Shown here in pieces: positions 16,870 to 31,317 of a stretch of DNA of 64,000 nucleotides. The stretch is taken from positions 1 to 64,000 of IMG/VR virus record IMGVR_UViG_3300037882_001770; one strand, 5' to 3'. Both the position numbers and the translations under genes were made by a program. The notes under the pieces are model-generated. The model ran no database searches and had not been told where the DNA came from. It saw only the letters and a list, made by a program, of their open reading frames with translations. Each line of letters begins with the position of its first letter. The stretch's first letter is position 1.

Positions 16870-17885
16870 TTAACAGTTATACCTCGTGGCAACCATTAGA
16901 AGAAGTTATTGTAGGCCGTGCTTACAGCCCTGATTATTTTGATTTTATTGATAACCCACAAGTACGCAATCAGCTACAGCAAATTCTGTCAGAGACCGAA
17001 GAAGATCTAAACAATCTTCAAAAAACCATCGAAACCTATGGTGCACGAGTTCGTCGTCCACATCTTCCCAGCAAAGACAGCTTTGTCTGGCATCAGACTG
17101 AAGGTGGTGGAGCTCCGTTGCCTCCGTTAACTCCCAGAGATTGGCAAATCAGTTTGGGAGACAAACTATTGCGTGTGTTGGCCATGCCCGAGCTGGACGA
17201 AATTTGTGCAGACTTTGCAGATCAAGTTGTCAATCCACACAAGAGTGCATGGGATCAGGATTGTATTTTAAATCAAGCCAGCGCCAGTTGTATTGTGCGT
17301 GTGGGCACAGATGTATTTTTTGACAACAGCGATTTTTTACGTCCAGAGCAAACACAATGGATTGTGGATAATTGCCTGGATAGTCGTTATCGCATTCACG
17401 AAGCAGTAACAGACGGCCACGGAGATGCGGTATTTGCTATTCTCAAACCCGGAGTTATTTTAAGCAGCAAGCACGATGTCAATTTGGATCTTGCCAAGGA
17501 CTTTCCAGGATGGGAAGTTCTTAAGATCTGGGATAGTAGTATTTGGGCAGCTATGGAAGTGGGCAAGTTCAAGTATGAAGAAAGTCCAGGTGCTTGGTAT
17601 GTACAAGGACAAACACCCACAGCCGAGTTCTCACAGTTTGTAGACACTTACTTGAACAAGTGGACTGGCTTTGTGGCCGAAACTGTGTTTGATGTCAACT
17701 GTTTGGTACTGGATGAAGAAAATGTCATTTTCTCAGCCTACAACAAAGATGTTTTTGATTTTTGTAAAAAGCACAAAATCAATCCTATTATTTCAGAATT
17801 GCGACACAGCTACTTCTGGGATGGCGGTATCAGTTGTTGTACACAAGACTTGACACGACGTGGCGGTTTAGAAACTTATCTCTAA
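16866..17885 (+). CDS. amidinotransferase (glycine/inosamine-phosphate amidinotransferase family)
   Basis: INSYTSWQPLEEVIVGR, PRD, HGD, FDVN, GGISCCTQDL with catalytic Cys position. Confidence 0.88.
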   Translation: MINSYTSWQPLEEVIVGRAYSPDYFDFIDNPQVRNQLQQILSETEEDLNNLQKTIETYGARVRRPHLPSKDSFVWHQTEGGGAPLPPLTPRDWQISLGDKLLRVLAMPELDEICADFADQVVNPHKSAWDQDCILNQASASCIVRVGTDVFFDNSDFLRPEQTQWIVDNCLDSRYRIHEAVTDGHGDAVFAILKPGVILSSKHDVNLDLAKDFPGWEVLKIWDSSIWAAMEVGKFKYEESPGAWYVQGQTPTAEFSQFVDTYLNKWTGFVAETVFDVNCLVLDEENVIFSAYNKDVFDFCKKHKINPIISELRHSYFWDGGISCCTQDLTRRGGLETYL

Positions 17886-17894
17886 TACTGTAAA

Positions 17895-19067
17895 TTATTT
17901 TGTAAACTCTGGCCACAATGCGTCAAACGACAGGCCAGGTGGCGGCATTGTTTGTTCTTGCCGAGCGTGCCATTGTGCCAGCTGTGCCACAGAAGTAATG
18001 TTAATCGCTGGCAGTGCCAATTGAGCACGATATCGTTTTAATATATCCAGACTTAATCGATATGTGTTAGCCGGATCGCTTTCGTATTTTGCCAACACAA
18101 GATCAATTTCTTCTTGCGCACGAGTTTTTAGTACGTTGGGCAATTTGCGAACATCCAGCACCGGCGGATCTATCAAATCGCACCAGTATATTTCAATATT
18201 ATAAAGTCGACAGAACTCAAAATAATCAACTAGATCAAATGCACAGTAGATAGAATAAGCAGGATGTGCTACTATGTGTTGTTGATCGTCTTTCATTAGT
18301 TGTAGATTACGTTTGAATATTTCCCAACTTGCACCACGTCTGACGTACTCGAACTTGGCTGGATCTGCATTGTCAAAACTAATTTGCCAGGCCACACTGG
18401 GCCATTTACGTAGTTCTTGATAGATGGCATTTTTAGTCAGATCTATACTTAAATTAGTAGTAACAACTACCTTGGCCTGAGTAGAATCAATCTCTTTGAG
18501 AAATTCCAATAATCCTGGCTGCAACAACGGCTCGCCACCGCCGAGAGTTAATCCTATTAGGCTATCACGATTGTCCTTGGCCAGTTGTATTAAATCATCT
18601 GATTTGTTACGCACATGGGTAATTGGAATTTTTTTTATGTGTTGCCATGCAGTACTAGTTTCTGGATTACAGTAGGTACAAGTTAAATTACATAAATTAG
18701 TCCAACATACCGTAAGATTAATTAGTTTAAAAAAGTTGATGTCTAGATCAATTTGATCCATTAGGTTAGCTGGTATGCGCCGAGTCAGTCTGGCACTATT
18801 CCCGCCCGTTGATTCGTTGTGTTGGCAGCTTTGGCAAAAGCTGTGCCATTCGCCTTGTGCTATAGTTTCTTTAAGTTCTTTTAATGTTGGGCCATTGATA
18901 ATAGATTGTATGCTTTGTTGTTTGATTGATCCTAGCGAGTTTTGTTTGTTATTCAGATAGTTCCAACCATAGCTATGTAGGCACGGCAATACTTGTCCTG
19001 TTTGATCTATATTCAACGTAGTCCACGGCTCTGGACAAAATGTTGGGCTCTTTGTTATTTTAGACAT
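17895..19067 (-). CDS. radical SAM protein with N-terminal twitch/SPASM-like domain
   Basis: FCPEPW..PC..CQSC; CNLTCTYC; GGEP. Confidence 0.9.
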   Translation of the reverse strand: MSKITKSPTFCPEPWTTLNIDQTGQVLPCLHSYGWNYLNNKQNSLGSIKQQSIQSIINGPTLKELKETIAQGEWHSFCQSCQHNESTGGNSARLTRRIPANLMDQIDLDINFFKLINLTVCWTNLCNLTCTYCNPETSTAWQHIKKIPITHVRNKSDDLIQLAKDNRDSLIGLTLGGGEPLLQPGLLEFLKEIDSTQAKVVVTTNLSIDLTKNAIYQELRKWPSVAWQISFDNADPAKFEYVRRGASWEIFKRNLQLMKDDQQHIVAHPAYSIYCAFDLVDYFEFCRLYNIEIYWCDLIDPPVLDVRKLPNVLKTRAQEEIDLVLAKYESDPANTYRLSLDILKRYRAQLALPAINITSVAQLAQWHARQEQTMPPPGLSFDALWPEFTK

Positions 19068-19764
19068 TGTTTCCTGATAGATAATCGTGTATTTTTTTTG
19101 CTACGTATTTGTGCCCGTCAACTGACATGTGGCCTCCGGGACAGACTGGAATGTGCTCGGTCCATGTTAACATGTGTTCGTGTGGGAACCCAGGATAATT
19201 TTTGACTTGAATTAAATTTTCAAATTTATTTAAACGGGCAAATACCCCGGGGTAAAACCAAGTTTCGCAACTGTTGATAAACAGATATTTTTGACCTATT
19301 GTTCTAAAATGATTTTGCAGAGCAATTACCTGTGCAAACTGTTTATCAAATTGATGGTTATCATCGTAATGATGCTTAATATAATCATTTAACCACGGCA
19401 TGCGTTTTAATAACACCAGGCTGTTGACCGTAAACGGTAAATCCTTGCCCTGGTAAAATAAGTCAAATCGAGGCATTGCGGTCCATGCACATATTACTAA
19501 ACTATATTGTTGATCTACAGTTTCTGTCATGGCCATGCGAAAGATTCGATCATTGCTGCCGCCTATCAGACTGAGATTAACAACCGGCGTGTTTTGAAGT
19601 TTTCCAAGCAGCTCTGGCCAAGCCAATTGGCTAGGAGCAAGCGGCAGTATTTGTGCGACTCGATTATCAAAATATTCATTTCCTAACTCAGTGGTCACCG
19701 TAGCAGGTACGTCGGGCAATTCTAACCCAAATGAATTGCTGTCACCTATTACTAATATAGTCAT
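19060..19764 (-). CDS. SGNH/GDSL-like protein
   Basis: GDSNSFG, GGSNDRI, terminal GGH...GH. Confidence 0.7.
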   Translation of the reverse strand: MTILVIGDSNSFGLELPDVPATVTTELGNEYFDNRVAQILPLAPSQLAWPELLGKLQNTPVVNLSLIGGSNDRIFRMAMTETVDQQYSLVICAWTAMPRFDLFYQGKDLPFTVNSLVLLKRMPWLNDYIKHHYDDNHQFDKQFAQVIALQNHFRTIGQKYLFINSCETWFYPGVFARLNKFENLIQVKNYPGFPHEHMLTWTEHIPVCPGGHMSVDGHKYVAKKIHDYLSGNNV

Positions 19765-20324
19765 GCACGGTTGTACCTAAGATATACGCTATTGCGTTGC
19801 ATGCCAGGAGGAACTGGTGTTGCTAATCCATGCAATACCTGTCCTGGCTTTTCAAAAAAATATCCAAAGTTATTTCGATAAGGGAGTTGTAATAGTATTT
19901 TGTCTGGGGTTTGATATATTGTAGTGCCCAATATTGGACCATTCCATTTTGCAGATTCTCGAGACATGTATATTTGTACTGCGTAATCAAAAAAATCAGG
20001 ATCCTGGTGTGGACTGATAGTGTATCCTTCAAAGTCGGCCCAAAGACTTATTCCTGCAGGGATGACCGGCCTCCCCAACATGCCGTTAATTTCTTTTAAT
20101 ATTTCAGAGCTAGCAGCGTAAGATACTATTTGATCGACAATCTTGCTTTTTCCTCGATACAAACGTCGACCTGCGCGATGACTAAAAACTTCAGTATCGG
20201 GCCAATCTGTGTCATCTATATTGTCAAATATAGAGAGTACTTGTTCTGCTAATTCTGCGGTAAAAAAATTATCTAGTAGATAAATGTTGGACTGTCCTAG
20301 ATAATTGATTACTGTATTCTTCAT
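19761..20324 (-). CDS. 2OG-Fe(II) oxygenase
   Basis: HQD...H...RxS arrangement (PHQD, VLHG, RNS). Confidence 0.75.
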   Translation of the reverse strand: MKNTVINYLGQSNIYLLDNFFTAELAEQVLSIFDNIDDTDWPDTEVFSHRAGRRLYRGKSKIVDQIVSYAASSEILKEINGMLGRPVIPAGISLWADFEGYTISPHQDPDFFDYAVQIYMSRESAKWNGPILGTTIYQTPDKILLQLPYRNNFGYFFEKPGQVLHGLATPVPPGMQRNSVYLRYNRA

Positions 20325-21829
20325 TAGCTACAAACCTTTACACCATATTCTTTCTCAAAACGATCTGCATCTGCGCGGTCATTAACCATGGGCTCTCCAC
20401 GTATGTTAAGACTAGTGTTTAAAAGCATAGGACATCCTGTTTCTTTGTACCACGCTTCGAGTAATCTTCTAATGCCTGAGCCATTATCTGCAACCGTTTG
20501 AATTCGGCTAGTACCATCCACATGACAGATAGCAGGAAATAAATCAGGACGGCGACAATGGGCGACAATTTGCATATAACTGCTATCACTCCAGCCCCGG
20601 GGCATAATAAAAAATTCATCCACATGCTCTGCCAGGATAACCGGTGCAAACGGTCTAAACTTTTGTCTACGCTTGATTTCATTTACTCGATCCTTTATAT
20701 CCACTCCTCGGGGGTCGGCAAGGAGACTTCTATTTCCCAGTGCTCTGGGTCCAAACTCGGCTCGACCACTAGCGACACCGACGATTCTATCACGGAGTAA
20801 ACAATCAACAAGGGCATGGACAGGATATTCTCCTGAGATGTTATGGCCAAGGTACGCATCTCGCCAGTTAACTCGTTTTCCGTAGGCCAGTGCGGCAGCA
20901 CCAAGACTGCTACCAGCGTCGCCAGGGCAAGGCATGATCCAAATGTTTTCAAAGTATTCACCGAGTTTTCTATTAGCAAGACAATTCAACGCCACGCCGC
21001 CCATGTACACTAGATTCGAACTCCAGTTAAACTCCTGAGCACGTTGCATAACACTATATATCAATTCTTCTGCCACCGATTGTGCAGCTCCGGCAATATC
21101 TTCATTGGATACGCCATACATAAATTCTTTTTCTACACCCAAGTGTAGATTTTCTTTAAATTTAAGTTCTTGTACATCGTCTACCAAATGATGTTTCATT
21201 GGGTGGGCATACACATTGCCATGAGTACTGTATGCACTCATGCCCATGGTAATATATTCTTCATCCATTGGATGCAGGCCAATTCGTTGAGTCATTGCAC
21301 TATAAAAAAGTCCAATAGAGTGTGGATATCGTTGTCTCCATAGTCGTTTGTAGATTGCGTGACCCGATCCAGTGTATTCTGCGCCCCAAATGCTAATAGT
21401 ATCAAACTCACCAATTGCATCAATTACTACCACAGTGGCACGTTCATATGGACTGGTTTGAAATCCGGCAGCTGCATGACTCAAATGGTGCGGATAACAT
21501 ACTTCATGTTCGGCCGAATTTGGATACCATGCACCAAGATGTTGAGTCAATGCGCCACGCACAGTCCACGGACCAAATTTATTTTGTCTGGTATATAGCT
21601 GTTGTAAATTGTGCATCCATGGGCGCTCATACCAGGCCACAGTATCAAACTGCCACGGGCATAGTTGTGAAACAAACTCGTCACAAAAATTACTATCATT
21701 TTTAATTTTACTGTAGCGTTCACTGTGTCCAGCAAACTCTATGTCGCCGTGACTGTTAATAACCGTGGCTGCGGCATCGTGATATCCTGCACTTAATCCT
21801 AGGGTGTACTTGACTGGCGCTCGTTTCAT
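20324..21829 (-). CDS. carbamoyltransferase (NodU/CmcH family)
   Basis: HDAAA, HHLSHAA, GGVALNC, GDAG, EFGPRALGNRS, FRPFAP, LLNTSLN. Confidence 0.95.
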   Translation of the reverse strand: MKRAPVKYTLGLSAGYHDAAATVINSHGDIEFAGHSERYSKIKNDSNFCDEFVSQLCPWQFDTVAWYERPWMHNLQQLYTRQNKFGPWTVRGALTQHLGAWYPNSAEHEVCYPHHLSHAAAGFQTSPYERATVVVIDAIGEFDTISIWGAEYTGSGHAIYKRLWRQRYPHSIGLFYSAMTQRIGLHPMDEEYITMGMSAYSTHGNVYAHPMKHHLVDDVQELKFKENLHLGVEKEFMYGVSNEDIAGAAQSVAEELIYSVMQRAQEFNWSSNLVYMGGVALNCLANRKLGEYFENIWIMPCPGDAGSSLGAAALAYGKRVNWRDAYLGHNISGEYPVHALVDCLLRDRIVGVASGRAEFGPRALGNRSLLADPRGVDIKDRVNEIKRRQKFRPFAPVILAEHVDEFFIMPRGWSDSSYMQIVAHCRRPDLFPAICHVDGTSRIQTVADNGSGIRRLLEAWYKETGCPMLLNTSLNIRGEPMVNDRADADRFEKEYGVKVCS

Positions 21830-21927
21830 TTATAGATAAACGGATCCCGTTTGCGTAGTTCTTTAAGTTTCTTACGATAGCGTATTTCTAATCGAATACG
21901 GCTGATTAAATTTTTAATCCATTTCAT
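21826..21927 (-). CDS. 33-aa basic peptide ending DPFIYK (not in ORF track)
   Basis: MKWIKNLISRIRLEIRYRKKLKELRKRDPFIYK; ATGA overlap on both sides, fills the gap exactly. Confidence 0.8.
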   Translation of the reverse strand: MKWIKNLISRIRLEIRYRKKLKELRKRDPFIYK

Positions 21928-23012
21928 TTTACATTCCTTAATTGAAAATCATAACCTGGGCGCAACTGATTAATCTGTTGGGACTTGTAATCACTGTCAG
22001 ACCAGCAGTAGTCAAACGTTTGCGAAATTCCGTCAACTTCAACACAATATATATCTAGGTAGTTGCCTAGTATCTTCCAAATGTCCTCACCGTTTTCTGT
22101 GCCAAAACTTTGTTTTAATTCAACCTGTGCAATGGGCAAGTAACCCAAGCTAAGTGATGGATCTGTTCTATCTTGATTGTTTGCGTCTAACCAAGCATGA
22201 AATGCCAATTGCTCTTTGGTATGCCACGGATTATCTCCAGCCATGGTAACATCATTGCCCCATTCAACATCAAATTCGCCACTGTAAAATCTAAGGCTAG
22301 TAATGGCCTCGCATACTGTTTCGGTTAACTCGGGTGCGCCCTCATCACGAAACACTTCAAATAAAGTTTTGCCTATCTGTGTCCAGTGCATATATACTCC
22401 GCCTAGCACACGATCGTACCCGTTGATAGCAAAGCCATCGCGGTGTGCTGGTTTCAAATCGTATCTGTCGGCCGTTAGCCATGTGGTAATTTGGCTCGGT
22501 CGTACCCAATATGGTGAGGTTGCAGCCTTGCGTTGTCCTAAAATAAGATTTTCCATTTCGTGGCAAATATTGTTAAGTTGACGAATAGCATATTTGGTCG
22601 AATAATCTGCTTTTTGATACCACGGGCTAAGATTCCACACTGTGCCCTGTAATACCTCAAAGTGGTTGTGCAATATGTTCATAATTTCATGATTGACTCC
22701 GTTGTCAGCATAGTCAAATCCCACTACACTTTCTGGGGTGAATATCTGTTCGATTTGATAACCAGGAAAAAATGAATTAATCTGATCCACTGCTTGATTG
22801 AGTTCATTGCACAAATATGGCAAATCTCTAGCGGTGTTAGGAAATCCCATAAAGCAAAAATTCTTTTCTAACATCTTGCCACTTTGCAATAGCTTCTTAA
22901 GTGCTACAATCCAGTCGTGCGCCAATTCGTGATCCTGCGCAGTAATTACATAATCGATTTGATCTTGTTTTTTTAATGGGTTTCGTAATACGATTTTAAC
23001 AGTCGATGTCAT
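21924..23012 (-). CDS. hypothetical protein, 362 aa
   Basis: Long coupled ORF; no motif recognised. Confidence 0.8.
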   Translation of the reverse strand: MTSTVKIVLRNPLKKQDQIDYVITAQDHELAHDWIVALKKLLQSGKMLEKNFCFMGFPNTARDLPYLCNELNQAVDQINSFFPGYQIEQIFTPESVVGFDYADNGVNHEIMNILHNHFEVLQGTVWNLSPWYQKADYSTKYAIRQLNNICHEMENLILGQRKAATSPYWVRPSQITTWLTADRYDLKPAHRDGFAINGYDRVLGGVYMHWTQIGKTLFEVFRDEGAPELTETVCEAITSLRFYSGEFDVEWGNDVTMAGDNPWHTKEQLAFHAWLDANNQDRTDPSLSLGYLPIAQVELKQSFGTENGEDIWKILGNYLDIYCVEVDGISQTFDYCWSDSDYKSQQINQLRPGYDFQLRNVK

Positions 23013-24300
23013 TCCACCACCTTAAAATATCTGCACGTTGTGATAATATATTTTGCATATTTGTTTTTGCTGTTCTTATACTTTCTAGTCGTAATATTCT
23101 GGCCTTGCCCTTGGCAAGTCCGGCTTGATATTGATCCGGCCACTGTTCTTCAAAAGTTGGGCGATTTTTTAATTGTATCAGTACATTTTGCATTGCGCCA
23201 CCGGTGTTAGGCACTAATTCGTCAATCCAAGATTCAAGCAGTGGACGCGGTAACGCCAAGGGACTCATAACTATGTCTGGGGTAAACGAAAATATCACTT
23301 TGGCCAATAGTTCTACACCCAGTTGATTGGCTAGCTGGGTCATTGCAGAAACTTCAAACATGCCTGGCAATGTAAGCGTAAAGTCTAGTCGCATTTGCCT
23401 GCGATTTTTGGATATAGTTAATCCTTGTTTAAAGTTTTCTAGAAAAACGGGCCACGATAAGCCTGTTCTGATATATTCTCCGATGTCTCCGGTTCCGTCA
23501 ACGGAGGCACATATTTGCCAATCACGTAAATTTTCCAACACGCCACTATAAAGATTAATGCCGTTGTAATCCACACGACTGAGATTGGTATTGTATCTTG
23601 CATAGACATTTGGTCCGTCTCCTAATTCAATAATGCGTTTCATGTAACGCCAGTGTTGCTCGTACATAAGTGGTTCGCCGCCGACCCAATATATTTCTTC
23701 TACTCTGTGTTCTTCTACTGCCTCGGCGAACTCTGCTTCAATTTGTTGATCTTGAAATTGACTAATTTGTTTTCTAACGTCAGAGCGCATCCACAAATTT
23801 TTTGTGTTACTCCAGTCCACCATATCGTGTTGTTTTTGTTCTGTTTCCCAACTGCTTGACAACATATCGCCGCAGGTTCTACATTTAAAATTGCACAGAT
23901 TACTGAATCTATAATCCCAACTTACAGGTTTCATAGTAGTATATCCTGTTTCGTCAGTCTCGTTCCATAACTTTTCATACTTGTGATTAAACAAATGACT
24001 AAAATATGTTCGATATACATCAGTGTTTAACAATTTGTCATTGCAGACTTCGCATTCGGGCAGTGTTTCGCCGGCCATCATACGGCGACGTACACTACGC
24101 ATGTGGTCACTGTTCCAGTGTTGCTCTAGAGTTATTGGGGTGTACTTTCCAGTGCCTGTGCTGGTGTCAATGTATTGTTCAAAACTCTGTGCAGGTTCAC
24201 GACTTGCACAGCACAACCTACGCTCTGTTTGTGGGCTCAGATAAGTGTGTGTCCATGGCGCCATGCACAACGTATCGGGCCGTTTATCCGGGGAATTCAT
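22996..24300 (-). CDS. radical SAM protein with N-terminal twitch-like domain
   Basis: LCMAPW..LCC..CEVC; CNFKCRTC; GGEP. Confidence 0.9.
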   Translation of the reverse strand: MNSPDKRPDTLCMAPWTHTYLSPQTERRLCCASREPAQSFEQYIDTSTGTGKYTPITLEQHWNSDHMRSVRRRMMAGETLPECEVCNDKLLNTDVYRTYFSHLFNHKYEKLWNETDETGYTTMKPVSWDYRFSNLCNFKCRTCGDMLSSSWETEQKQHDMVDWSNTKNLWMRSDVRKQISQFQDQQIEAEFAEAVEEHRVEEIYWVGGEPLMYEQHWRYMKRIIELGDGPNVYARYNTNLSRVDYNGINLYSGVLENLRDWQICASVDGTGDIGEYIRTGLSWPVFLENFKQGLTISKNRRQMRLDFTLTLPGMFEVSAMTQLANQLGVELLAKVIFSFTPDIVMSPLALPRPLLESWIDELVPNTGGAMQNVLIQLKNRPTFEEQWPDQYQAGLAKGKARILRLESIRTAKTNMQNILSQRADILRWWNDIDC

Positions 24301-25501
24301 ATTCGATCAACTTGGCAAATTCTGGTTCAACTATCGCAAGATTTTGTTTACGCTTGCGATCTAAGTCTGCTACCCTCATACGTAATATAAATCCATCAAG
24401 GCTGGTGCCACGATTCATAAACTCAATAATATTGGCAAACTCTTGTTGAGTCTTTTGATCTACTTGTGCTGTTTGTAATTTTTGTGTAATTCCTTGTTTT
24501 GCTGTGTCTGGTAAGGTGGCAATACTAAAATAATAAGCATCGTGCATCATGTTCCAGTAGACAAAATCAAATCCTTGTGTTTTAATCCAGTTGGCCACTT
24601 GTTCAATATAATACACGTTAAACACATTGACAGTGGTACAAACTTGTAGTTGAACATTTTTGTTGCGGCTTCGTAACAGTTTAAATTTATTAATATTGTT
24701 ACAGACGTCTGCCCAGATGGCATTACTGCGTTGATACTCAAATCTCTCGCCTACATCGTCAATGCTAAATGCAATCTCGACTGTTTTAAAGTGTTTCCAA
24801 ATTTCTTCTGCTTGTTCGGGCCACTGGGTTCCATTGGTGTTGTAATGTATTTCAATGTTGCCGGCGATTCCTCTATCGACTAGGCCTTGCAATAGATCAA
24901 AGTGTTCTTGGATCATAAATGGCTCACCGCCGGTGAACTCTATGTATTGTATTTGCTCGCTCACTTGTTCAATTTCTTGCCAAAATTTAGGATTCTCTCT
25001 GGGCCATGCTCCTTGCTTGAGCATAGTGTAGTGATGGCTCGACTTCTTGTCCTCATCGCGTCCTAAGAATTGCAATTCTTCTGTGGCAAATGTACTTGAA
25101 CTCCAACTTCCACAAATACGACATTTCAAATTGCAAATGTTTCCTAATTTTAAATCCAAAAACATCAAAGGCTTTGGTGCTGCTGTCCACTCTGAGTCAG
25201 GAAGCATGTGTTTCAAACGATCTAGTGTATGCATGCGTTTACTAGTTCGACCGGATCTTTCCTCTCGCCAGCATTTACGACATGTTTGTGGTTGTTTCTT
25301 GTCGAGAAAATCTTGGCGAAGTTGTTGCATGTTGTTGCTGGTTTGGATTTCTGCAAAGCTGGCAGTATTCAAATCAAACTTGTTTCCGGCGTTGTCAACA
25401 ATTTCGTCATCGGCTAGACAGCACGGACGTACTGTGCCAATGGGGCTAGTCTCTAAACTGATCCATGGCAATACGCAAAATTTATCGTGTGGTATATTCA
25501 T
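24284..25501 (-). CDS. radical SAM protein with N-terminal twitch-like domain
   Basis: FCVLPW..PCC..CRKC; CNLKCRIC; GGEP. Confidence 0.9.
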   Translation of the reverse strand: MNIPHDKFCVLPWISLETSPIGTVRPCCLADDEIVDNAGNKFDLNTASFAEIQTSNNMQQLRQDFLDKKQPQTCRKCWREERSGRTSKRMHTLDRLKHMLPDSEWTAAPKPLMFLDLKLGNICNLKCRICGSWSSSTFATEELQFLGRDEDKKSSHHYTMLKQGAWPRENPKFWQEIEQVSEQIQYIEFTGGEPFMIQEHFDLLQGLVDRGIAGNIEIHYNTNGTQWPEQAEEIWKHFKTVEIAFSIDDVGERFEYQRSNAIWADVCNNINKFKLLRSRNKNVQLQVCTTVNVFNVYYIEQVANWIKTQGFDFVYWNMMHDAYYFSIATLPDTAKQGITQKLQTAQVDQKTQQEFANIIEFMNRGTSLDGFILRMRVADLDRKRKQNLAIVEPEFAKLIEYEFPG

Positions 25502-26868
25502 TCTGATTTTAATTTAAAAATTGTGTTGACTAATGGAGCCAACGGATCCAGGGCATGTTTTTCTTTTTTAGGGCGATATTCAATAATTTGTTCTAGTTCC
25601 GGAACTACTTGCATAAGTGACTCGGATCTTGCATTGTCCAGTTGTTCTACTGATTTCCAAAATTCTGGCAATAGATAACTGTTATCAGTGGACATCATGA
25701 ACTGTATTGCTCCTTGAAATCCACCAACGGCTCGTTGTATAGTATCGCGTGGGCGTAACCATTCAATATGTTCTTCAAACTGTTGTTTAAACTTTTCTTT
25801 TAAATGAGTTGGCAACATGTCAATTCTGTAATTGGCCGGGCCTTGCAAAATATTTAGATTAAAATCTTTTGGTTCAATAAACCCTTGGTCAATCATGTAT
25901 CTGTGATAAGATACAAAATTCCAAATATTCATCATACTAAGTGTAGGACTGATCATAAAATCAATGTGTGGACATTCGCGTTTTAAATCACGAATGTTTT
26001 GTTCTACTTGTGCCCAGTCTGTGCCAGAACGTATAATTGCAGCACGGTCGCCCATGTCGTCTAAGCTGGCCGCAACACACACGCTAGGAAAATGCTTCCA
26101 CAAATCCAATACATTTTGTTTTTTAAATTTTAACTCGGTTAGATTTGTGTTATAAATTAATTTTACCTTTGTATTGCCTTTTTCAATCAATAGTTTAAGA
26201 ATACGATTGTGTTCTTCCATGATCAAAGGTTCGCCGCCGGCAAAGTAGATCTGGTCCAGGTGAGGAATATGTTCTTGCATCTGTTCCCATACGTCTTCTT
26301 CGTGACGCCCAGCAAATTGTACTCTAGGACGCAGCGGTTTGCCCCACAGCTTGACATCGTCATCATACCAACGGCTACTAAAAATGCTGCCACAGCTACG
26401 ACATTTTAAATTACAAATATTGCTAAAACGCACATCCCAATAGTGCAATTTCATATCAGGTAAACTACCATCGGGCAATGTTTGGTCTACTTCTGCAATA
26501 TGTTGGCCAAAGTTTTTGTTTGAATTGTTGCGCATACTTGCAAACCCAGCAGCTTCTTGTTCATAACAATCTGTACATTCTTTGCAAGGTTTATCTGCCA
26601 ACATGTTTGTACGCATTTCACGCATGGGCACATCATTCCAGATTTCTCGCATGCTCTTTTCTTTGAAGTTGCCAACTGGATGTTTTGCATTGCCCAAGCA
26701 ACAAGGATACGCACGACCATCGGGCCAGGCATGCAAATGTATCCACGGAATCATACAAAATGTTTCTGATTCTACTAATCTATGTTTTTGTTTTTCGGTT
26801 AAATCTTCTAACGGAATGTAACTTGGTACACGATCTTTCCAATTGTACTTGCCTAATATTTTACTCAT
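25498..26868 (-). CDS. radical SAM protein with N-terminal twitch-like domain
   Basis: FCMIPW..PCC..CTDC; CNLKCRSC; GGEP. Confidence 0.9.
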   Translation of the reverse strand: MSKILGKYNWKDRVPSYIPLEDLTEKQKHRLVESETFCMIPWIHLHAWPDGRAYPCCLGNAKHPVGNFKEKSMREIWNDVPMREMRTNMLADKPCKECTDCYEQEAAGFASMRNNSNKNFGQHIAEVDQTLPDGSLPDMKLHYWDVRFSNICNLKCRSCGSIFSSRWYDDDVKLWGKPLRPRVQFAGRHEEDVWEQMQEHIPHLDQIYFAGGEPLIMEEHNRILKLLIEKGNTKVKLIYNTNLTELKFKKQNVLDLWKHFPSVCVAASLDDMGDRAAIIRSGTDWAQVEQNIRDLKRECPHIDFMISPTLSMMNIWNFVSYHRYMIDQGFIEPKDFNLNILQGPANYRIDMLPTHLKEKFKQQFEEHIEWLRPRDTIQRAVGGFQGAIQFMMSTDNSYLLPEFWKSVEQLDNARSESLMQVVPELEQIIEYRPKKEKHALDPLAPLVNTIFKLKSE

Positions 26869-28196
26869 AATTCAAGATACCAGTTGTTTAGTGCAGGAAA
26901 TGCAGATGCAAAATTCTTGCCACGACGGTTGTCGTATTGTTTATAAAAGTTTTTAAAGTCATTCAAAAGTTTTGGCATTTCAAATGCTTCTTTGTGCGGG
27001 GTTTTAACCACATCAAGATAATCAATTAACCGTTGCGTATGATTAACTTCGTGTTCCTGTAGTAGTCCGGTAGGCCTAGCGCGATCTAACCACTGCTCCA
27101 AATTGAGTTTGTATTTTGAAAGTATTTCAGGAGGCAATACTAACGGAGATTGAAAACTTGGAAACCTCAATATGTTCAATGTGAAGTTTGGAAAATCTTT
27201 TCCGTATTGTTTTTTTAGATCTAGGCATACATCCAAAAATTCTGGCAGGCTGTCCAAACACAATGCATTGATAGTGTTCATTACATGCAGTCCTCTGATT
27301 TTTTTACTGCTGGCGATCTTGTGCATGTTATCTACCCATGCTTGCCAGTCAAGACCATCGCGAATGTATTCGGCTTGTGCTCCTACACTTTCATTACTGG
27401 TGTAGATGTCTACTTCTAGTCCGTCAATACTATCCAGTAAACGATCTATATCTACTTCTGCACCTAGATTACTGTTAATAGCCAGCCGAGTCGTACTTTT
27501 ACCTTTGTTGTTTTTAAACCAGTCTAGTAATTTCCAGGTTTCACCCGACATTAGTGGCTCTCCGCCGGTTACTCTCAGTTCTTGAAGAGTCTTGTGTAGA
27601 TCTGTTTCCCACCACTTAAAGAACGCTTCAACATAGGGATTTGTTTCGCCAAAGCGGTATAGTTGAGCACTATTGTGACCATGAGTAAAGTGGTTACGCC
27701 CATCAGACACCAGGCGCTCATAGGGACCGTTGCGTTGTATGTCTTTAACCCATGTACTACTGAAAGCAGGGTTACAATAGCTACAAGCAAATTGGCAAGT
27801 GCGATCGAATGCAATTTCAAGCGTGCGAAGATTGACGTCATCTTCTGGCGGAGTGTTGTATGCTTCATTAAGGGCCTCTATAGGATAAATTTTTGATTTG
27901 TATACACGGTCGCTAATAGCTTCTCGTCCCATGTCTTCAATCTTCCAGCAGTACTCACATCCTGACGGACGTTCTCCTGCTAGCATTTTACGCCGATCGT
28001 CTTTCTTTTGATCAGTGTTGTGTAATAGTTTAGGGTTATCGACAACTTTGTTGATATCAACTAAATGAGCCGGTGGGTGATGACAGCTTGTGGTCATGCC
28101 CGAGCCCAACCATATAGTAGCATTGTACCACTTGGCTCCACAAAAACTGGCACTTTTGGCATCTAATATCTGTTGTCGAAATTCTAAATCATTCAT
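26865..28196 (-). CDS. radical SAM protein (AKW/CHHP subtype)
   Basis: FCGAKW..SCHHP..CEYCW; CQFACSYC; GGEP. Confidence 0.9.
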   Translation of the reverse strand: MNDLEFRQQILDAKSASFCGAKWYNATIWLGSGMTTSCHHPPAHLVDINKVVDNPKLLHNTDQKKDDRRKMLAGERPSGCEYCWKIEDMGREAISDRVYKSKIYPIEALNEAYNTPPEDDVNLRTLEIAFDRTCQFACSYCNPAFSSTWVKDIQRNGPYERLVSDGRNHFTHGHNSAQLYRFGETNPYVEAFFKWWETDLHKTLQELRVTGGEPLMSGETWKLLDWFKNNKGKSTTRLAINSNLGAEVDIDRLLDSIDGLEVDIYTSNESVGAQAEYIRDGLDWQAWVDNMHKIASSKKIRGLHVMNTINALCLDSLPEFLDVCLDLKKQYGKDFPNFTLNILRFPSFQSPLVLPPEILSKYKLNLEQWLDRARPTGLLQEHEVNHTQRLIDYLDVVKTPHKEAFEMPKLLNDFKNFYKQYDNRRGKNFASAFPALNNWYLEL

Positions 28197-29343
28197 TGAT
28201 AGTAAGGTGTTGGTTTATAAATTGAAAAAAACGGTTTGGAAATTCTTGCCGAACTTGCAATCTCATGTCAGCAAGATGTTGTTGATTGTATTTACACGTT
28301 TCTTCCGCAGCGGCTAGGAAAGCTGAAAGATCTTGTTTGCACAATTCCTCAACTACGGCGGCTATACGATCAATTCGTTGTTGCCCATCTTCTATGTTAT
28401 CGAAACTTTCGTCGATTAGATGCCCAAACGTTTTAAATCCTAAATTGTGCAGGTCTCGGTAGTAACCCTGATTAGCTACCACTATAAATGGATGACCAAT
28501 TGCAATGGGTTTCCAAATTTTTTCTGTTCTAAAGCTGTATGGGTAGTCAAACACTGTTTCGGTAACTAGGCTAAAATATGTGTCAATATAAGGAGCTGGC
28601 TCTAGATAGATTTCTCCCCACGAGTTATCAAATAGATTGTACTTTATATAGTCAACTGAAAATTTTGTGTTGACTCGATCTTTATAAAATTTATATTCGT
28701 ACTTGGGATCCAAACACTTGATCACCCCGGGTGCAGACAGCAAATTGGTTGATTGTCTCCATAATTTTATAAAACGACTTTTTACAGGTGTGACGTCGAG
28801 ATTGGTCCAGATACTTTGATCCAGTATATTTGCTAGTTTGAATTTTTCAATAAGATATTTTCTGTGTGGCCGTGAACGCCCGTTTAAAAATAAAAACTTA
28901 TAAGGTTTGTCGGACCTGGCATAGATCTCATCAACTCTGGCGGCTGCTTCTACATTTTCTTCATAATCATACAGTTTAGGCAAAAAACTATCGTATTGTA
29001 AACATTTGTAGGAATCATCCATGTCGCCGCCGCCAATGATTAAAACTTTTCCAGCATGTGCTAGATCTTCAATGGGTATCGCCTGCATTAGCTGACCAGC
29101 AATAGTTTCAGAGCCTTCGGCTGGATTGCTAAAAATGTAGTATGCAAGACCTTGCTCAATTTCTCTTCTAATTCGTTCATGATACTTTATAAATTCTTTA
29201 CGGCTGATTACATACACTGCGCCCGGAATGGTTTCATGATTGCTAAAGTCCCAGAAGTCTCCGTCGGCGTAAGGTTGTAGTAAGTCGTAGACTTCACAAA
29301 ATGTATCTAGAATTAGTTTAAATTGTTTTTGCATGATACTCAC
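28189..29343 (-). CDS. putative glycosyltransferase ('TEK' family)
   Basis: FSLVTET...RTEKIWKPI...HPFI...GFKTF...DESFD. Confidence 0.6.
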   Translation of the reverse strand: MSIMQKQFKLILDTFCEVYDLLQPYADGDFWDFSNHETIPGAVYVISRKEFIKYHERIRREIEQGLAYYIFSNPAEGSETIAGQLMQAIPIEDLAHAGKVLIIGGGDMDDSYKCLQYDSFLPKLYDYEENVEAAARVDEIYARSDKPYKFLFLNGRSRPHRKYLIEKFKLANILDQSIWTNLDVTPVKSRFIKLWRQSTNLLSAPGVIKCLDPKYEYKFYKDRVNTKFSVDYIKYNLFDNSWGEIYLEPAPYIDTYFSLVTETVFDYPYSFRTEKIWKPIAIGHPFIVVANQGYYRDLHNLGFKTFGHLIDESFDNIEDGQQRIDRIAAVVEELCKQDLSAFLAAAEETCKYNQQHLADMRLQVRQEFPNRFFQFINQHLTINE

Positions 29344-30739
29344 ACTCTGCCCACCATGAACTCATTTCTGGAAAGGTTTCTAAAAAATTAGTTCCGCGTC
29401 GACGATCGTGTTCGCTAAAAAATTTGTAAAAGTCGGCCTTGTTACGATTAATATATGTAGGATCTAACTTTTGTCCATCGCGCATCCAGGCTATGTCTCG
29501 GTCCAATCTAGCTATCTCGTAGTCTTTGAATCCTTTAAAACGAGTTTCTTCTGTTTCAATTTGTCGAATCATCCAAGCCCATAATTGTTCAAGTTGGTCC
29601 ACATAACTTTCAGGCAACAGTTGCAGACTCTGCCATGTGGGCTGACGTAGAACTGGAGTATCAAACCATACACGCTGATAAGTGTTGCTGTATATTTTAC
29701 GTAGTCCTAGTATGCCAGCGAACAACGAACTAAGATTAGTGACACTAAGATTATTCATAGTAACAATAAAGGTAATGCTGTTTCGTCCTGGTATCTCCGT
29801 CAGGAACTGATTAACACGATCCCACAACAGGTCAAAATTTAGACCGTGTCTAATATATTCTGCTTGATCACCAAAACTGTCTAAACTGATAAACTGCATG
29901 AAGTGTTCAATTTTTTCACCTTCACATAGTTCCTTTACATACCCCTTATACTTCTGCCAGGACTTTTCATCCACGCTGAAGTTACTAGTCACATTCAAGT
30001 GTAGGTCTGGTTTGGGGTTGGCCAACACGTAATCAAAGACACGATAGGTATTTTTATCTAACATGGGTTCGCCACCAGTCATACGAAAGTGTTGTAGTTC
30101 TGGGTATAGTGTGGGCCACCATTCCCAAAATGCATCTACATACGGATTGTCTTCGCGGACAGGTATAGGACGATTCCGGCCAACAAAGTGGCCAGGATCA
30201 TTGTGAGTAGTTGATGTAGGATATCCTCCTAGGCGATCAACTTCTTGTTGCCAAGTACTACTAAACTGCGGACTACAATAACTGCAAGCAAGATTGCATA
30301 CGTGATTAAAATTAACTTCCACATAACTAGGAACAACATCTTCGTCTCCATTGGAGTTTACTATAATATCAAAGTCCTTGGCAGCCCAAGGCTCGCCACT
30401 ACGATAATGTCTGTCGCTTAACTTGTTGTTATCCTCCATGGCCCAGCAGTAGCTACATTCGCTAGGGCGTTCTTGCTTGAGCATAATCTTACGTTGTTCT
30501 TTCTTGTAAGGAGTATTATGCAATGCGGCAGGATTATTCTTTAATAGTTCTGCAGGTATAGGATGTAACGGTGGATGATAACAACTATTATTAAGTCCGG
30601 TTGGCAGATGTAAACTTACCTGTTTCCATTTGGCCAAGCAAAGTGCATGACCAAGTTGATCTTTCATTTCTTCGGCAGATGACAAGAACTTTGATTTAAA
30701 GTCTTGTGTCATATTGTCGCCTTTGTTTTGAGAATTCAT
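29318..30739 (-). CDS. radical SAM protein (AKW/CYHP subtype)
   Basis: LCLAKW..SCYHP..CSYCW; CNLACSYC; GGEP. Confidence 0.9.
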   Translation of the reverse strand: MNSQNKGDNMTQDFKSKFLSSAEEMKDQLGHALCLAKWKQVSLHLPTGLNNSCYHPPLHPIPAELLKNNPAALHNTPYKKEQRKIMLKQERPSECSYCWAMEDNNKLSDRHYRSGEPWAAKDFDIIVNSNGDEDVVPSYVEVNFNHVCNLACSYCSPQFSSTWQQEVDRLGGYPTSTTHNDPGHFVGRNRPIPVREDNPYVDAFWEWWPTLYPELQHFRMTGGEPMLDKNTYRVFDYVLANPKPDLHLNVTSNFSVDEKSWQKYKGYVKELCEGEKIEHFMQFISLDSFGDQAEYIRHGLNFDLLWDRVNQFLTEIPGRNSITFIVTMNNLSVTNLSSLFAGILGLRKIYSNTYQRVWFDTPVLRQPTWQSLQLLPESYVDQLEQLWAWMIRQIETEETRFKGFKDYEIARLDRDIAWMRDGQKLDPTYINRNKADFYKFFSEHDRRRGTNFLETFPEMSSWWAECEYHAKTI

Positions 30740-31317
30740 TGTTCTATTAGTTTTATTAAATTACGAAACAAATGAGCCGTGCCGTCGGCATTTAAGTGCC
30801 CATCTGGTAACCGATGTGAAGGAGTAACATGCGGAAGGAACACCGGTATTTTCACATTTCGCGGTTCCCAACTAAAAAATAAAACTTGTTTATTTTGAGA
30901 AATAATATTTGAATACGCGGTAGATACCAACATGTCACTTACGGAATTCCAATGATCGGTATCAAACAAACTGTATAAAGATTTATGTAAAAGTTGATAG
31001 CTGTCCTCGATGCATTGACTGTCTAATTCCAGCGGAAGTTCAATAAATTCTTTTGATGATAACAGGTCAATATTTTGTTTATGATATTTTAAATGCCATC
31101 TAGAACTAAAAGTCCACCCAACAACTACTGCATCGTGTTTTTCAAAATTTTCATAAACATCAAGTGCTATTGCAGAATTACTTTTTCCAGGTCTTGATAA
31201 ATTTGTAACCTCATATCCCAGCTCAACAAAATGCTGGTTAAGTGTTTCTTTAGGATCAAGATGCAATCCGTAAGTAAAGCTACATCCATCGATCAATAAT
31301 CTTTGTTGCATTACCAT
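30736..31317 (-). CDS. SGNH-like protein
   Basis: GCSFTYG, GKSNSAI, DGHLN. Confidence 0.65.
   Translation of the reverse strand: MVMQQRLLIDGCSFTYGLHLDPKETLNQHFVELGYEVTNLSRPGKSNSAIALDVYENFEKHDAVVVGWTFSSRWHLKYHKQNIDLLSSKEFIELPLELDSQCIEDSYQLLHKSLYSLFDTDHWNSVSDMLVSTAYSNIISQNKQVLFFSWEPRNVKIPVFLPHVTPSHRLPDGHLNADGTAHLFRNLIKLIEQ

What the first reader, a model, noticed from the sequence alone, without database searches (positions are those of the whole stretch)
17895..30739. Six radical-SAM paralogues with the auxiliary Cys domain at the N-terminus, in two subtypes
Seen: all six have CxxxCxxC and GGEP, preceded by an N-terminal Cys-rich region. Four are of type CxxPW..C(C)..CxxC (17895, 22996, 24284, 25498) and two of type CxAKW..SC[HY]HP..CxYCW (26865, 29318); four are consecutive. 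Established: SPASM/twitch domains are normally C-terminal; the twitch enzyme BtrN oxidises an aminocyclitol and many SPASM enzymes modify peptides. Inference: a permuted family performing serial oxidations or epimerisations on sugars, or post-translational modification of virion proteins. Six Fe-S enzymes is a large investment for a phage.
Basis: partly seen in the sequence, partly recalled or inferred. Interest (0 to 1): 0.72.

Follow-up and report, generated by a model that had tools for sequence, protein, structure and literature searches.

The report
Phage array of N-terminal-twitch radical SAM enzymes
A 317-kb aquatic jumbo phage carries eleven diverged copies of an already catalogued but uncharacterised radical-SAM family whose extra iron-sulfur domain sits at the N-terminus; five form a conserved cassette shared with Bdellovibrionota bacteria, most likely tailoring a sugar or glycan.

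Summary
All six ORFs are radical SAM proteins with CxxxCxxC, GGEP and an N-terminal four-Cys twitch-like domain, in two subtypes. The permuted architecture is not new. All six score above the curated cut-off of NCBIfam NF033640, "N_Twi_rSAM". I found no paper on that family and no characterised member.

New here:
- The genome (317 kb, T4-like capsid) has 11 copies, its largest paralogue family, only 20-31% identical to one another. It also has other radical SAM genes, and an ErpA/IscA-like carrier and a superoxide dismutase next to one copy.
- Five copies (22996-30739) occur in 80 of 80 related phage loci. A GT2-like gene, a carbamoyltransferase, an unknown 362-aa protein and a near-invariant 33-aa peptide usually accompany them.
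- Subtype-by-subtype orthologues (35-53% identity) lie side by side in a closed Bdellovibrionota chromosome. In 20 such genomes the commonest neighbours are other radical SAMs and GT2 glycosyltransferases, and no RiPP recognition family is among the 25 commonest.

Most likely function: serial radical tailoring of a sugar or glycan. This rests on gene context only. Peptide or protein modification, including of the 33-aa peptide, is not excluded.

Verdict: new members of a known, uncharacterised family, of moderate interest.

The parts
17895..19067 (-). N_Twi_rSAM paralogue, type 1 (390 aa). Single Cys at the second auxiliary position. Variable within the lineage.
   Evidence: NF033640 191 bits. 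Pfam SPASM at residues 11-82 and Radical_SAM at 122-260. An orthologue was found in only 1 of 80 related phage loci. Sister to genomic copy 116498-117658 in the tree (100/99).
22996..24300 (-). N_Twi_rSAM paralogue, type 1 (434 aa). Core-cassette member and the most conserved of the five.
   Evidence: NF033640 286 bits. Present in 80/80 related loci, median identity 70%. 46% identical orthologue in Bdellovibrionota chromosome G030; clade support 100/100.
24284..25501 (-). N_Twi_rSAM paralogue, type 1 (405 aa). Core cassette.
   Evidence: NF033640 344 bits. Present in 80/80 loci, median identity 48%.
25498..26868 (-). N_Twi_rSAM paralogue, type 1 (456 aa). Core cassette and best match to the family model.
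   Evidence: NF033640 413 bits. 80/80 loci. More than 7,000 metagenomic homologues at E <= 1e-5, the 120 best at 79-98% identity. AlphaFold model pLDDT 93. The rSAM core is roughly equidistant (Z 11-13) from anSME, BlsE, CteB, SkfB, MoaA, DesII and viperin.
26865..28196 (-). N_Twi_rSAM paralogue, type 2 (443 aa; SCHHPP and CEYCW motifs). Core cassette.
   Evidence: NF033640 305 bits. 80/80 loci, median identity 65%. Orthologues 53% and 49% identical lie side by side in G030; clade support 100/100.
29318..30739 (-). N_Twi_rSAM paralogue, type 2 (473 aa; SCYHPP and CSYCW motifs). Core cassette.
   Evidence: NF033640 311 bits. 80/80 loci, median identity 66%. Bacterial orthologues at 35-36% identity.
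28189..29343 (-). Phage-specific 384-aa protein between two rSAM genes. Weak lead to a GT10-like glycosyltransferase.
   Evidence: No Pfam or NCBIfam hit. Atlas: nearest named clusters are Glyco_transf_10 at 0.79-0.80 (lead only). Structural neighbours include phage proteins that also carry methyltransferase or epimerase domains. Present in 33/80 loci.
21924..23012 (-). Conserved unknown 362-aa protein directly downstream of the rSAM array.
   Evidence: 71/80 loci. Model pLDDT 87. No Foldseek PDB match. Weak cyclophilin-like barrel with a helical insert, Z 7-8.6. Uncharacterised cellular homologues in AFDB, E 1e-23.
21826..21927 (-). 33-aa basic peptide gene (pep33). Its ATG overlaps the stop of the upstream ORF, and its stop overlaps the ATG of the carbamoyltransferase gene.
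   Evidence: Sequence read. Full length in 67/80 related loci and always 33 aa, with the C-terminal 17 residues almost invariant. Codon-position entropy 0.49/0.33/1.07. A Shine-Dalgarno-like sequence lies upstream.
20324..21829 (-). Carbamoyltransferase of the NodU/CmcH/TobZ type (501 aa).
   Evidence: Pfam Carbam_trans_C 2e-48 and Carbam_trans_N 8e-30. 62/80 loci, median identity 63%.
19060..19764 (-). SGNH/GDSL-like protein (234 aa).
   Evidence: Pfam DUF6071, 1e-7. N-terminal GDSN motif read. GDSL-like proteins recur in the bacterial clusters.
31311..32237 (-). GT2-like glycosyltransferase candidate (308 aa) that travels with the rSAM families.
   Evidence: Atlas cluster 'Glycosyltransferase 2-like domain-containing protein', score 0.99. 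77/80 loci. Orthologues at 34-37% identity next to N_Twi_rSAM genes in three Bdellovibrionota genomes. Paralogue at 12407-14611.
32574..34137 (-). Two conserved proteins (258 and 268 aa) that look like GT-A-type sugar transferases by eye.
   Evidence: Present in 75 and 71 of 80 loci. No Pfam or PDB sequence hit. The DxD-like 'DADY' motif was read, so this is inference only.
16866..17885 (+). Amidinotransferase (339 aa), convergent with rSAM gene 17895.
   Evidence: PDB sequence hits: StrB1 inosamine-phosphate amidinotransferase 1bwd at 1.9e-12, AGAT at 2.7e-12, SxtG at 2.8e-9.
10434..12441 (+). NDP-sugar epimerase/dehydratase (10434-11405) and DegT-family aminotransferase (11311-12441).
   Evidence: Pfam Epimerase 1.6e-46 and GDP_Man_Dehyd 2.7e-36; DegT_DnrJ_EryC1 1.4e-54.

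Best explanation
Identity. The six genes are diverged members of the curated but uncharacterised family NF033640 (N_Twi_rSAM). Each has a radical SAM core, with a CxxxCxxC site for the SAM-cleaving [4Fe-4S] cluster and a GGEP SAM-binding motif. An N-terminal twitch domain precedes the core. Its four conserved Cys (C-x17/18-C-x~41-51-C-x2-C, the same order and similar spacing as in BtrN) would fully ligate one auxiliary [4Fe-4S] cluster.

Organisation. The genes are not recent duplicates. They represent at least four or five old, functionally distinct subtypes that travel together as a cassette. Five of them are fixed in this lineage of 320-355-kb aquatic jumbo phages. Orthologues of the same subtypes lie side by side in Bdellovibrionota chromosomes.

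Inferred function. Each subtype performs one radical step (H-atom abstraction followed by oxidation, epimerisation, dehydration or C-C/C-X bond formation) on successive intermediates of one carbohydrate-type product. In the phage that product would be built by the co-encoded NDP-sugar dehydratase/epimerase, aminotransferase, amidinotransferase, carbamoyltransferase, GT-like and SGNH-like enzymes. Because the long minus-strand gene run continues into fibre-like structural genes, the product probably decorates a virion or cell-surface structure.

Shown: family membership, motifs, copy number, conservation, shared synteny with bacteria, gene neighbourhoods.
Inferred: cluster binding, substrate class, chemistry, target.
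For: Family and motifs. The BtrN twitch region aligns with the N-terminal part of the paralogue profile (E 0.004).

Copy number: 11 copies, the largest paralogue family in the genome.

Cassette conservation: five related complete or near-complete phage genomes carry 7-11 copies above the cut-off, all with the same adjacent five-gene block. The five core genes occur in 80/80 related loci, and flanking GT-like genes in 71-77/80.

Orthology with bacteria: orthologues of 22996 (46%), 26865 (53% and 49%) and 29318 (35%), plus a 24284/25498-like copy, are adjacent in closed chromosome G030. Tree clades mixing phage and bacterial sequences have 100/100 support.

Bacterial context:
- GT2, PMT_2, nucleotidyltransferase, GDSL, APH-type kinase and further rSAMs.
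- Among 140 nearest neighbours in 20 genomes: other rSAMs 17, GT2 7, methyltransferases 3, DegT 2, and no RiPP recognition family among the 25 commonest.
- A GT2-N_Twi_rSAM fusion protein exists.
- The phage GT2-like gene 31311 has orthologues in the bacterial clusters.

Phage context: epimerase/dehydratase, DegT, amidinotransferase, carbamoyltransferase.

Fe-S support: an ErpA/IscA-like carrier and an Fe/Mn superoxide dismutase lie directly after copy 235471.

From established knowledge: several twitch radical SAM enzymes (BtrN, NeoN, HygY, BlsE) act on carbohydrates.
Against: No member of the family is characterised, so the substrate class rests on neighbourhood alone.
- The solved structures and sequences nearest to the core are as often peptide-modifying (TvgB-type 8vpo, SkfB, CteB, anSME) as sugar- or nucleotide-modifying (BlsE, DesII, viperin).
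- Many family members are fused to TPR or Sel1 repeats, which usually bind proteins.
- A near-invariant 33-aa peptide gene sits one gene downstream of the array.
- Six of the eleven copies lie outside the array, five of them scattered among replication, packaging and housekeeping-type genes with no sugar genes nearby.
Confidence: 0.5

Rival explanations
1. The array matures a ribosomal peptide or a protein. The near-invariant 33-aa peptide (pep33), or a structural protein such as the neighbouring fibre-like proteins, would be the substrate. The radical SAM enzymes would install cross-links, epimerisations or other side-chain changes. As in mycofactocin, glycosyl- and carbamoyl-transferases could then decorate a peptide-derived product.
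For: - pep33 is a real gene under strong purifying selection: 67/80 loci, always 33 aa, C-terminal YRKKLKELRKRDPFIYK almost invariant, third-position entropy 1.07 against 0.49 and 0.33. In this window it is translationally coupled to both neighbours.
- The closest PDB sequence match of the core is a RiPP cyclopropyl synthase (8vpo, identified in PMC10878394), followed by SkfB.
- TPR and Sel1 fusions are common in the family.
- The adjacent unknown protein has a weak cyclophilin-like (peptide-binding) fold.
- Two Peptidase_S74 (tail-fibre chaperone) proteins occur among the bacterial neighbours. The phage operon includes a protein with a weak Peptidase_G2 autoproteolytic-domain hit.
Against: - The orthologous bacterial cassette in G030 has no pep33, no homologue of the 362-aa protein and no carbamoyltransferase within 60 kb. 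pep33-like hits in five Bdellovibrionota genomes were chance matches in alternative frames.
- No RRE/PqqD domain was detected in the six enzymes, and none is among the 25 commonest families in the bacterial neighbourhoods.
- pep33 has no Cys and few of the residues typical of a radical SAM RiPP core.
- pep33 was not found in the isolate phage collection.
Confidence: 0.25
2. The paralogues serve several unrelated purposes. The scattered copies and perhaps some array members would act on nucleotides, DNA bases, lipids or host metabolites (for example viperin-like nucleotide chemistry or DNA hypermodification), rather than on one shared pathway.
For: - Five copies lie singly next to primase/helicase-, terminase-, ClpP-, IF-1- and clamp-loader-like genes, judged by eye.
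- There are weak profile matches to viperin, MoaA and QueE.
- Pairwise identity is only 20-31%.
- From established knowledge, radical SAM enzymes occur in phage thymidine hypermodification pathways (PMC5889632 and PMC8989533 appeared).
Against: The five array genes are fixed together in 80/80 loci, with overlapping reading frames in this window. They recur together in bacteria, which argues for one pathway at least for the array. The viperin, MoaA and QueE matches cover only the generic rSAM core and fall far below those families' cut-offs.
Confidence: 0.15
3. The N-terminal Cys group binds zinc or a [2Fe-2S] centre, or is purely structural, so these are single-cluster radical SAM enzymes with a decorative N-terminal domain.
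For: Cluster binding was not tested. Pfam SPASM does not reach significance for the two type-2 proteins.
Against: The four Cys are conserved across the family. The SPASM model matches end to end at E down to 1e-12 in the four type-1 proteins. The region aligns with the BtrN twitch. NCBI's curators name the family for its twitch domain.
Confidence: 0.07

Closest known systems
NCBIfam NF033640, N_Twi_rSAM (twitch domain-containing radical SAM protein)
   Same: All six window proteins, and ten in the genome, score above the curated cut-off over nearly the full model length. They share the same architecture, an N-terminal twitch followed by the rSAM core.
   Different: Nothing structural. The family has no described function that I could find. 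The phage setting, the 11-fold expansion and the fixed five-gene cassette do not follow from the family definition.
BtrN (2-deoxy-scyllo-inosamine dehydrogenase), the prototype twitch enzyme
   Same: One auxiliary cluster site with four Cys in the same order and similar spacing. The twitch region aligns with the N-terminal part of the paralogue profile. It acts on an aminocyclitol or sugar, which fits the gene context here.
   Different: BtrN's twitch domain is C-terminal and here it is N-terminal. The only sequence match is that short region (E 0.004). BtrN did not appear among the 50 listed structural matches of the core. These are not orthologues.
SPASM radical SAM peptide maturases and anSME (CteB, SkfB, SuiB, TvgB-type 8vpo, anSMEcpe)
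   Same: Best overall fold and sequence matches of the rSAM core: Z 12-12.7, and 8vpo at E 8e-15. Pfam's SPASM model hits the N-terminal domain.
   Different: Those enzymes carry a C-terminal SPASM domain, most with seven or eight Cys and two auxiliary clusters. The RiPP maturases among them usually also have an N-terminal RRE. Here there are only four or five N-terminal Cys and no RRE hit.
Sugar-tailoring radical SAM enzymes BlsE and DesII
   Same: The core fold matches about as well as the peptide enzymes do (Z 12.5 and 11.6). The gene context with NDP-sugar enzymes is similar.
   Different: Sequence similarity is marginal (BlsE E about 1e-3), and the domain order differs.
Radical SAM gene arrays in cultured jumbo phages (Vibrio phages K566/K567, Ralstonia phage RsoM2USA)
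   Same: Homologues at about 22% identity covering 87% of the protein. In K566, three or four adjacent family members are annotated only as 'radical SAM domain-containing protein' or 'hypothetical protein'. These phages are close to or within the isolates whose major capsid proteins are nearest this phage's.
   Different: Fewer copies. Their sequences form separate long branches in the tree. No pep33 was found in the isolate collection.

Membership tests
NCBIfam NF033640 N_Twi_rSAM | Full-length match to the family HMM above the curated cut-off (170 bits) | tested here: met
   Scores of 191, 286, 344, 413, 305 and 311 bits for the six ORFs. Ten genomic copies are above the cut-off and one scores 165 bits.
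NCBIfam NF033640 N_Twi_rSAM | Radical SAM core with CxxxCxxC and a GGEP-type SAM motif, placed C-terminal to the auxiliary domain | tested here: met
   One CxxxCxxC at residues 123-152 and GGEP at residues 177-222 in all six. Pfam Radical_SAM hits lie downstream of the SPASM hits.
Twitch (half-SPASM) domain | Four conserved Cys able to ligate one auxiliary [4Fe-4S] cluster, in a short beta-hairpin plus helix domain | tested here: met
   C38, C57, C98 and C101 are invariant in the 11 paralogues. In 104 family members two are invariant and two at least 90% conserved. The SPASM model matches in four of six. The region aligns with the BtrN twitch. The model shows a hairpin followed by helices with pLDDT above 95.
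Twitch (half-SPASM) domain | Actual binding of an auxiliary [4Fe-4S] cluster close to the active site | not testable with these tools
   This needs reconstitution, iron and sulfide analysis and EPR.
Full SPASM domain | Seven or eight Cys motif binding two auxiliary clusters, C-terminal to the core | tested here: not met
   Only four or five Cys lie in the N-terminal domain, and there is no conserved Cys group C-terminal to the core.
Radical SAM RiPP maturases | RiPP recognition element (PqqD-like domain) in the enzyme or a neighbouring protein | tested here: not met
   No PqqD/RRE hit in Pfam or NCBIfam for the six proteins, and none among the 25 commonest families in 140 bacterial neighbours. 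The neighbouring 362-aa protein shows no RRE-like fold. Some RiPP radical SAM enzymes lack an RRE, so this does not exclude peptide substrates.
Radical SAM RiPP maturases | A co-encoded short precursor peptide | tested here: inconclusive
   pep33 is conserved and lies one gene from the array. It is absent from the orthologous bacterial cassette. The complex prediction gave no answer.
BtrN/NeoN-type carbohydrate twitch enzymes | Orthology to a characterised sugar-modifying twitch enzyme | tested here: not met
   Only the twitch region aligns with BtrN (E 0.004). No NCBIfam equivalog of a characterised enzyme comes near its cut-off; for example BlsE TIGR04466 scores 20 bits against a cut-off of 400.

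The most novel reading that the evidence does not exclude
The five-gene N-terminal-twitch radical SAM cassette may be an undescribed, horizontally mobile biosynthetic system. It would include its co-travelling GT2-like gene and two further radical SAM families, and be shared by an abundant lineage of aquatic jumbo phages and Bdellovibrionota. It would make a heavily radical-tailored surface glycan or, in the phages, a glycosylated and carbamoylated product derived from the invariant 33-aa peptide. This would imply several new radical SAM reactions and a new kind of virion or cell-surface decoration.
Probability: 0.3. Interest if true: 0.8.

Novelty: new member of a known kind. Interest (0 to 1): 0.55.

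Why it matters
Radical SAM enzymology is driven by finding families with no known reaction. This is a large one, with 1,518 cluster representatives at E <= 1e-30 and no characterised member. Its subtypes are organised as fixed multi-enzyme cassettes, which suggests a pathway with five or more consecutive radical steps.

Finding the same cassette in an abundant lineage of aquatic jumbo phages and in predatory-bacteria genomes gives two handles on it. One is comparative: the genes that always travel with the cassette (a GT2-like enzyme and two more radical SAM families). The other is experimental: cultured Vibrio and Ralstonia jumbo phages that carry small arrays.

For phage biology it shows an unusually large commitment to oxygen-sensitive Fe-S chemistry. 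The genome has about 15 radical-SAM-type ORFs, its own A-type Fe-S carrier and a superoxide dismutase. Because the cassette sits in the gene run that continues into fibre-like structural genes, it points to an unexplored form of virion or host-surface modification.

Tried and rejected
- Megablast of the whole region against the isolate phage collection gave no match.
- The search for related loci with the paralogue alignment failed because no stretch was conserved enough.
- Four of the six literature searches looked for the family name, N-terminal twitch/SPASM, or phage radical SAM arrays. None found a paper on this family. The 'moraphage' paper (PMC12619734) appears to describe a different jumbo-phage lineage.
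- Complex prediction of pep33 against the 22996 and 26865 products returned 'no answer' (score 0.00). This is no evidence for or against binding.
- pep33 look-ups: no match in isolate phages, too short for the protein database, and the two weak hits in Bdellovibrionota genomes lie in alternative frames and are chance; one lies inside a long ORF that looks like SecA by eye.
- The 362-aa neighbour has no Pfam hit, no PDB sequence hit and no Foldseek PDB match. It has only a middling cyclophilin-like match, which I treat as a lead.
- Pfam and NCBIfam gave nothing for ORFs 12407, 15721, 19761, 28189, 30736, 32574 and 34540.
- I could not measure Cys-Cys or cluster-cluster distances, because model coordinates are not exposed to the scripting box.
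- I considered that the bacterial copies might be phage contamination of MAGs and rejected this. G030 and G168 carry them on single contigs of 2.66 and 2.91 Mb. In G030 the cluster is followed by housekeeping genes.

Full report
WHAT IS THERE

The window is the first 64 kb of a 317,493-bp IMG/VR virus record with a CheckV completeness of 89%. The genome encodes a T4-type major capsid protein (Pfam Gp23, E 9e-99). The nearest isolates, at 62-67% identity, are jumbo myoviruses such as Pseudomonas phage PA5oct, Vibrio phage 2.275.O, Sinorhizobium phage Phosso and 350-kb Escherichia phages. Sequencing runs that hold parts of the region are labelled aquatic metagenome.

From 37584 down to 17895 the minus strand carries one long run of genes. 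Most have overlapping stop and start codons. The six ORFs of the finding lie in that run at exactly the stated coordinates.

- Each protein has one CxxxCxxC and one GGEP motif, preceded by an N-terminal Cys group.
Type 1 is CxxPW...(C)C...CxxC in 17895, 22996, 24284 and 25498. Type 2 is CxAKW...SC[HY]HPP...CxYCW in 26865 and 29318.
- Pfam places its SPASM model end to end on the N-terminal 64-76 residues of the four type-1 proteins, and Radical_SAM downstream.
- A profile of the paralogues aligns its N-terminal positions 7-76 with the twitch region of BtrN (E 0.004).
- The four auxiliary Cys are invariant in all genomic paralogues and invariant or at least 90% conserved in 104 family members.
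- The spacing, C-x17/18-C-x~41-51-C-x2-C, gives four ligands. That fits a twitch domain with one fully ligated auxiliary cluster, not a full SPASM domain.

THE ARCHITECTURE IS ALREADY CATALOGUED

All six proteins match NCBIfam NF033640, 'N_Twi_rSAM, twitch domain-containing radical SAM protein'. Scores are 191-413 bits against a cut-off of 170, over nearly the whole model. The 'permuted family' is therefore a curated family.

It is large: 1,518 representatives of 50%-identity clusters at E <= 1e-30. Four literature searches aimed at the family or at phage radical SAM arrays found no paper about it and no characterised member.

An AlphaFold model of the 25498 product is confident (pLDDT 93). 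Its core is about equally far (Z 11-13) from anSME, BlsE, CteB, SkfB, MoaA, DesII and viperin. The best PDB sequence match is a RiPP cyclopropyl synthase, 8vpo (E 8e-15). Structure therefore does not decide the substrate class.

THE FINDING UNDERSTATES THE EXPANSION

- The whole genome has ten copies above the cut-off and one at 165 bits. This is its largest paralogue family.
- Pairwise identity is only 20-31%.
- There are further radical-SAM-type ORFs of other families: 100315, 145906, 316741, and 219191 by homology.
- Immediately after copy 235471 come an Fe/Mn superoxide dismutase (E 2e-24) and an ErpA/IscA-type Fe-S carrier (E 8e-34). A second IscA-like gene lies elsewhere.

A FIXED CASSETTE IN THE PHAGE LINEAGE

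More than 7,000 metagenomic proteins match the 25498 product at E <= 1e-5, and the 120 best are 79-98% identical to it. Five related complete or nearly complete phage genomes (320-354 kb, two with terminal repeats) carry 7-11 copies above the cut-off. All have the same adjacent five-gene block.

Conservation across 80 related loci:

| Gene | Loci with it (of 80) |
|---|---|
| 22996, 24284, 25498, 26865, 29318 (rSAMs) | 80 each (median identity 48-70%) |
| GT2-like 31311 | 77 |
| 32574 | 75 |
| 33331 | 71 |
| Unknown 362-aa protein, 21924 | 71 |
| pep33 | 67 |
| Carbamoyltransferase | 62 |
| GT10-like 28189 | 33 |
| rSAM 17895 | 1 |

Copy 17895 is sister to the scattered copy 116498.

THE SAME CASSETTE IN BACTERIA

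NF033640 is above its cut-off in 45 of 201 sampled Bdellovibrionota genomes, often in eight or more clustered copies.

In the closed 2.66-Mb chromosome G030, several orthologues lie side by side:
- 22996 (46% identity)
- 26865 (53% and 49%)
- 29318 (35%)
- a 24284/25498-like copy

These identities are well above the 20-31% between paralogues. A maximum-likelihood tree puts phage and bacterial sequences together in subtype clades with 100/100 support. The subtypes are therefore old and distinct, and the cassette has moved between phages and bacteria as a unit.

The phage GT2-like gene 31311 and the radical SAM families of 145906/316741 and 219191 also have orthologues in these bacterial clusters.

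WHAT THE NEIGHBOURS SAY

In the phage:
- an NDP-sugar epimerase/dehydratase and a DegT aminotransferase
- an amidinotransferase whose best solved relative is StrB1
- a NodU/TobZ-type carbamoyltransferase and an SGNH-like protein
- several GT-like proteins
- fibre-like structural genes upstream in the same gene run, including a 4,927-aa ORF

In bacteria:
- GT2, PMT_2, nucleotidyltransferase, GDSL, APH-type kinase and more radical SAM genes
- among the 140 nearest neighbours in 20 genomes: other radical SAMs 17, GT2 7, methyltransferases 3, DegT 2, and no RiPP recognition family among the 25 commonest
- a GT2-N_Twi_rSAM fusion protein exists, and TPR and Sel1 fusions are common

MOST LIKELY MECHANISM

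Each subtype uses its SAM cluster to generate a 5'-deoxyadenosyl radical and abstract a hydrogen atom from a carbohydrate-type intermediate. The fully Cys-ligated N-terminal auxiliary cluster would serve as electron acceptor or donor, as in BtrN.

The five fixed subtypes would act in series on one product, together with transferases. In the phage this product probably decorates a virion or surface structure. The substrate class is inference from context, and I give it about 0.5.

MAIN RIVAL: PEPTIDE OR PROTEIN MODIFICATION

A 33-aa ORF (21826-21927) lies between the 362-aa protein and the carbamoyltransferase, and is translationally coupled to both.
- It is full length in 67/80 loci, and its C-terminal 17 residues are almost invariant, although the flanking enzymes are only about 50% identical.
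- Codon-position entropy is 0.49/0.33/1.07, which shows selection on the peptide itself.
- Together with the TPR fusions and the RiPP-like nearest structures, this keeps a peptide substrate alive.

Against it:
- The bacterial cassette has no pep33, no 362-aa homologue and no carbamoyltransferase.
- No RRE was found.
- A complex prediction gave no answer.

Lesser rivals are unrelated functions for the scattered copies and a non-cluster role for the N-terminal Cys group.

VERDICT

The architecture is already known as a curated family, and its function is unknown.

Worth taking forward are the fixed, horizontally shared multi-subtype cassette, the scale of Fe-S investment in a phage, and the invariant peptide. 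Cultured phages with small arrays (Vibrio K566/K567, Ralstonia RsoM2USA) make the question testable.

Noticed in passing
window 21826-21927 (minus): A 33-aa basic peptide gene, MKWIKNLISRIRLEIRYRKKLKELRKRDPFIYK. It is more conserved than any enzyme around it (76-97% identity across related phages, C-terminal half almost invariant). Its start and stop codons overlap the neighbouring genes. Function unknown.
   Followed up: partly
window 16866-17885 (plus); paralogue at genome 190073-190996: An amidinotransferase of the StrB1/AGAT/SxtG family (E 1.9e-12 to StrB1). It is unusual in a phage and lies next to the glycan-type genes.
   Followed up: partly
genome 235471-237481 (L005:4472-6482): An N_Twi_rSAM copy is followed directly by an Fe/Mn superoxide dismutase and an ErpA/IscA-type Fe-S carrier. 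A second IscA-like gene lies at 153768-154088. The phage appears to bring its own Fe-S support and oxidative protection.
   Followed up: partly
genome 145906-146910, 316741-317469, 219191-219823, 100315-101205: Further radical-SAM-type ORFs of other families. The first three have homologues (about 27-37% identity) among the neighbours of N_Twi_rSAM genes in Bdellovibrionota clusters, so several radical SAM families co-travel.
   Followed up: partly
window 21924-23012 (minus): A conserved 362-aa protein with a confident model and no Foldseek match in the PDB. It has only a middling cyclophilin-like barrel with a helical insert. Uncharacterised cellular homologues exist in AFDB.
   Followed up: partly
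window 37747-52530 (minus): A 4,927-aa ORF followed by an 1,143-aa ORF, presumably giant fibre or structural proteins, in the same minus-strand gene run just upstream of the glycan-type operon. tblastn found no homologue in the 80 related loci, though their 10-kb flanks may not reach these genes.
   Followed up: no
window 9413-10090 (plus): An FAD-dependent thymidylate synthase, ThyX (TIGR02170, E 9e-46), just upstream of the sugar genes.
   Followed up: no
L098 (Vibrio phage K566, OZ196521.1, 161548-168284): A cultured 255-kb Vibrio phage has three adjacent genes of this family annotated only as 'radical SAM domain-containing protein', plus a fourth homologue nearby annotated 'hypothetical protein'. 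It is a possible experimental system.
   Followed up: partly
proteins P0186, P0216, P0189, P0257, P0263, P0179, P0224, P0135-P0142: Metagenomic family members occur fused to TPR or Sel1 repeats or to a GT2 domain. Several long proteins (790-1,106 aa) match the query in two or three stretches, which suggests tandem double radical SAM proteins.
   Followed up: partly
L094 and L100 (Bdellovibrionota G030 chromosome, about 2,381,000-2,404,400): A ~23-kb chromosomal cluster with about ten radical SAM genes, three GDSL-like proteins (one fused to TPR), an APH-type kinase, a nucleotidyltransferase and a GT2. It is an uncharacterised radical-SAM-rich pathway in its own right.
   Followed up: partly
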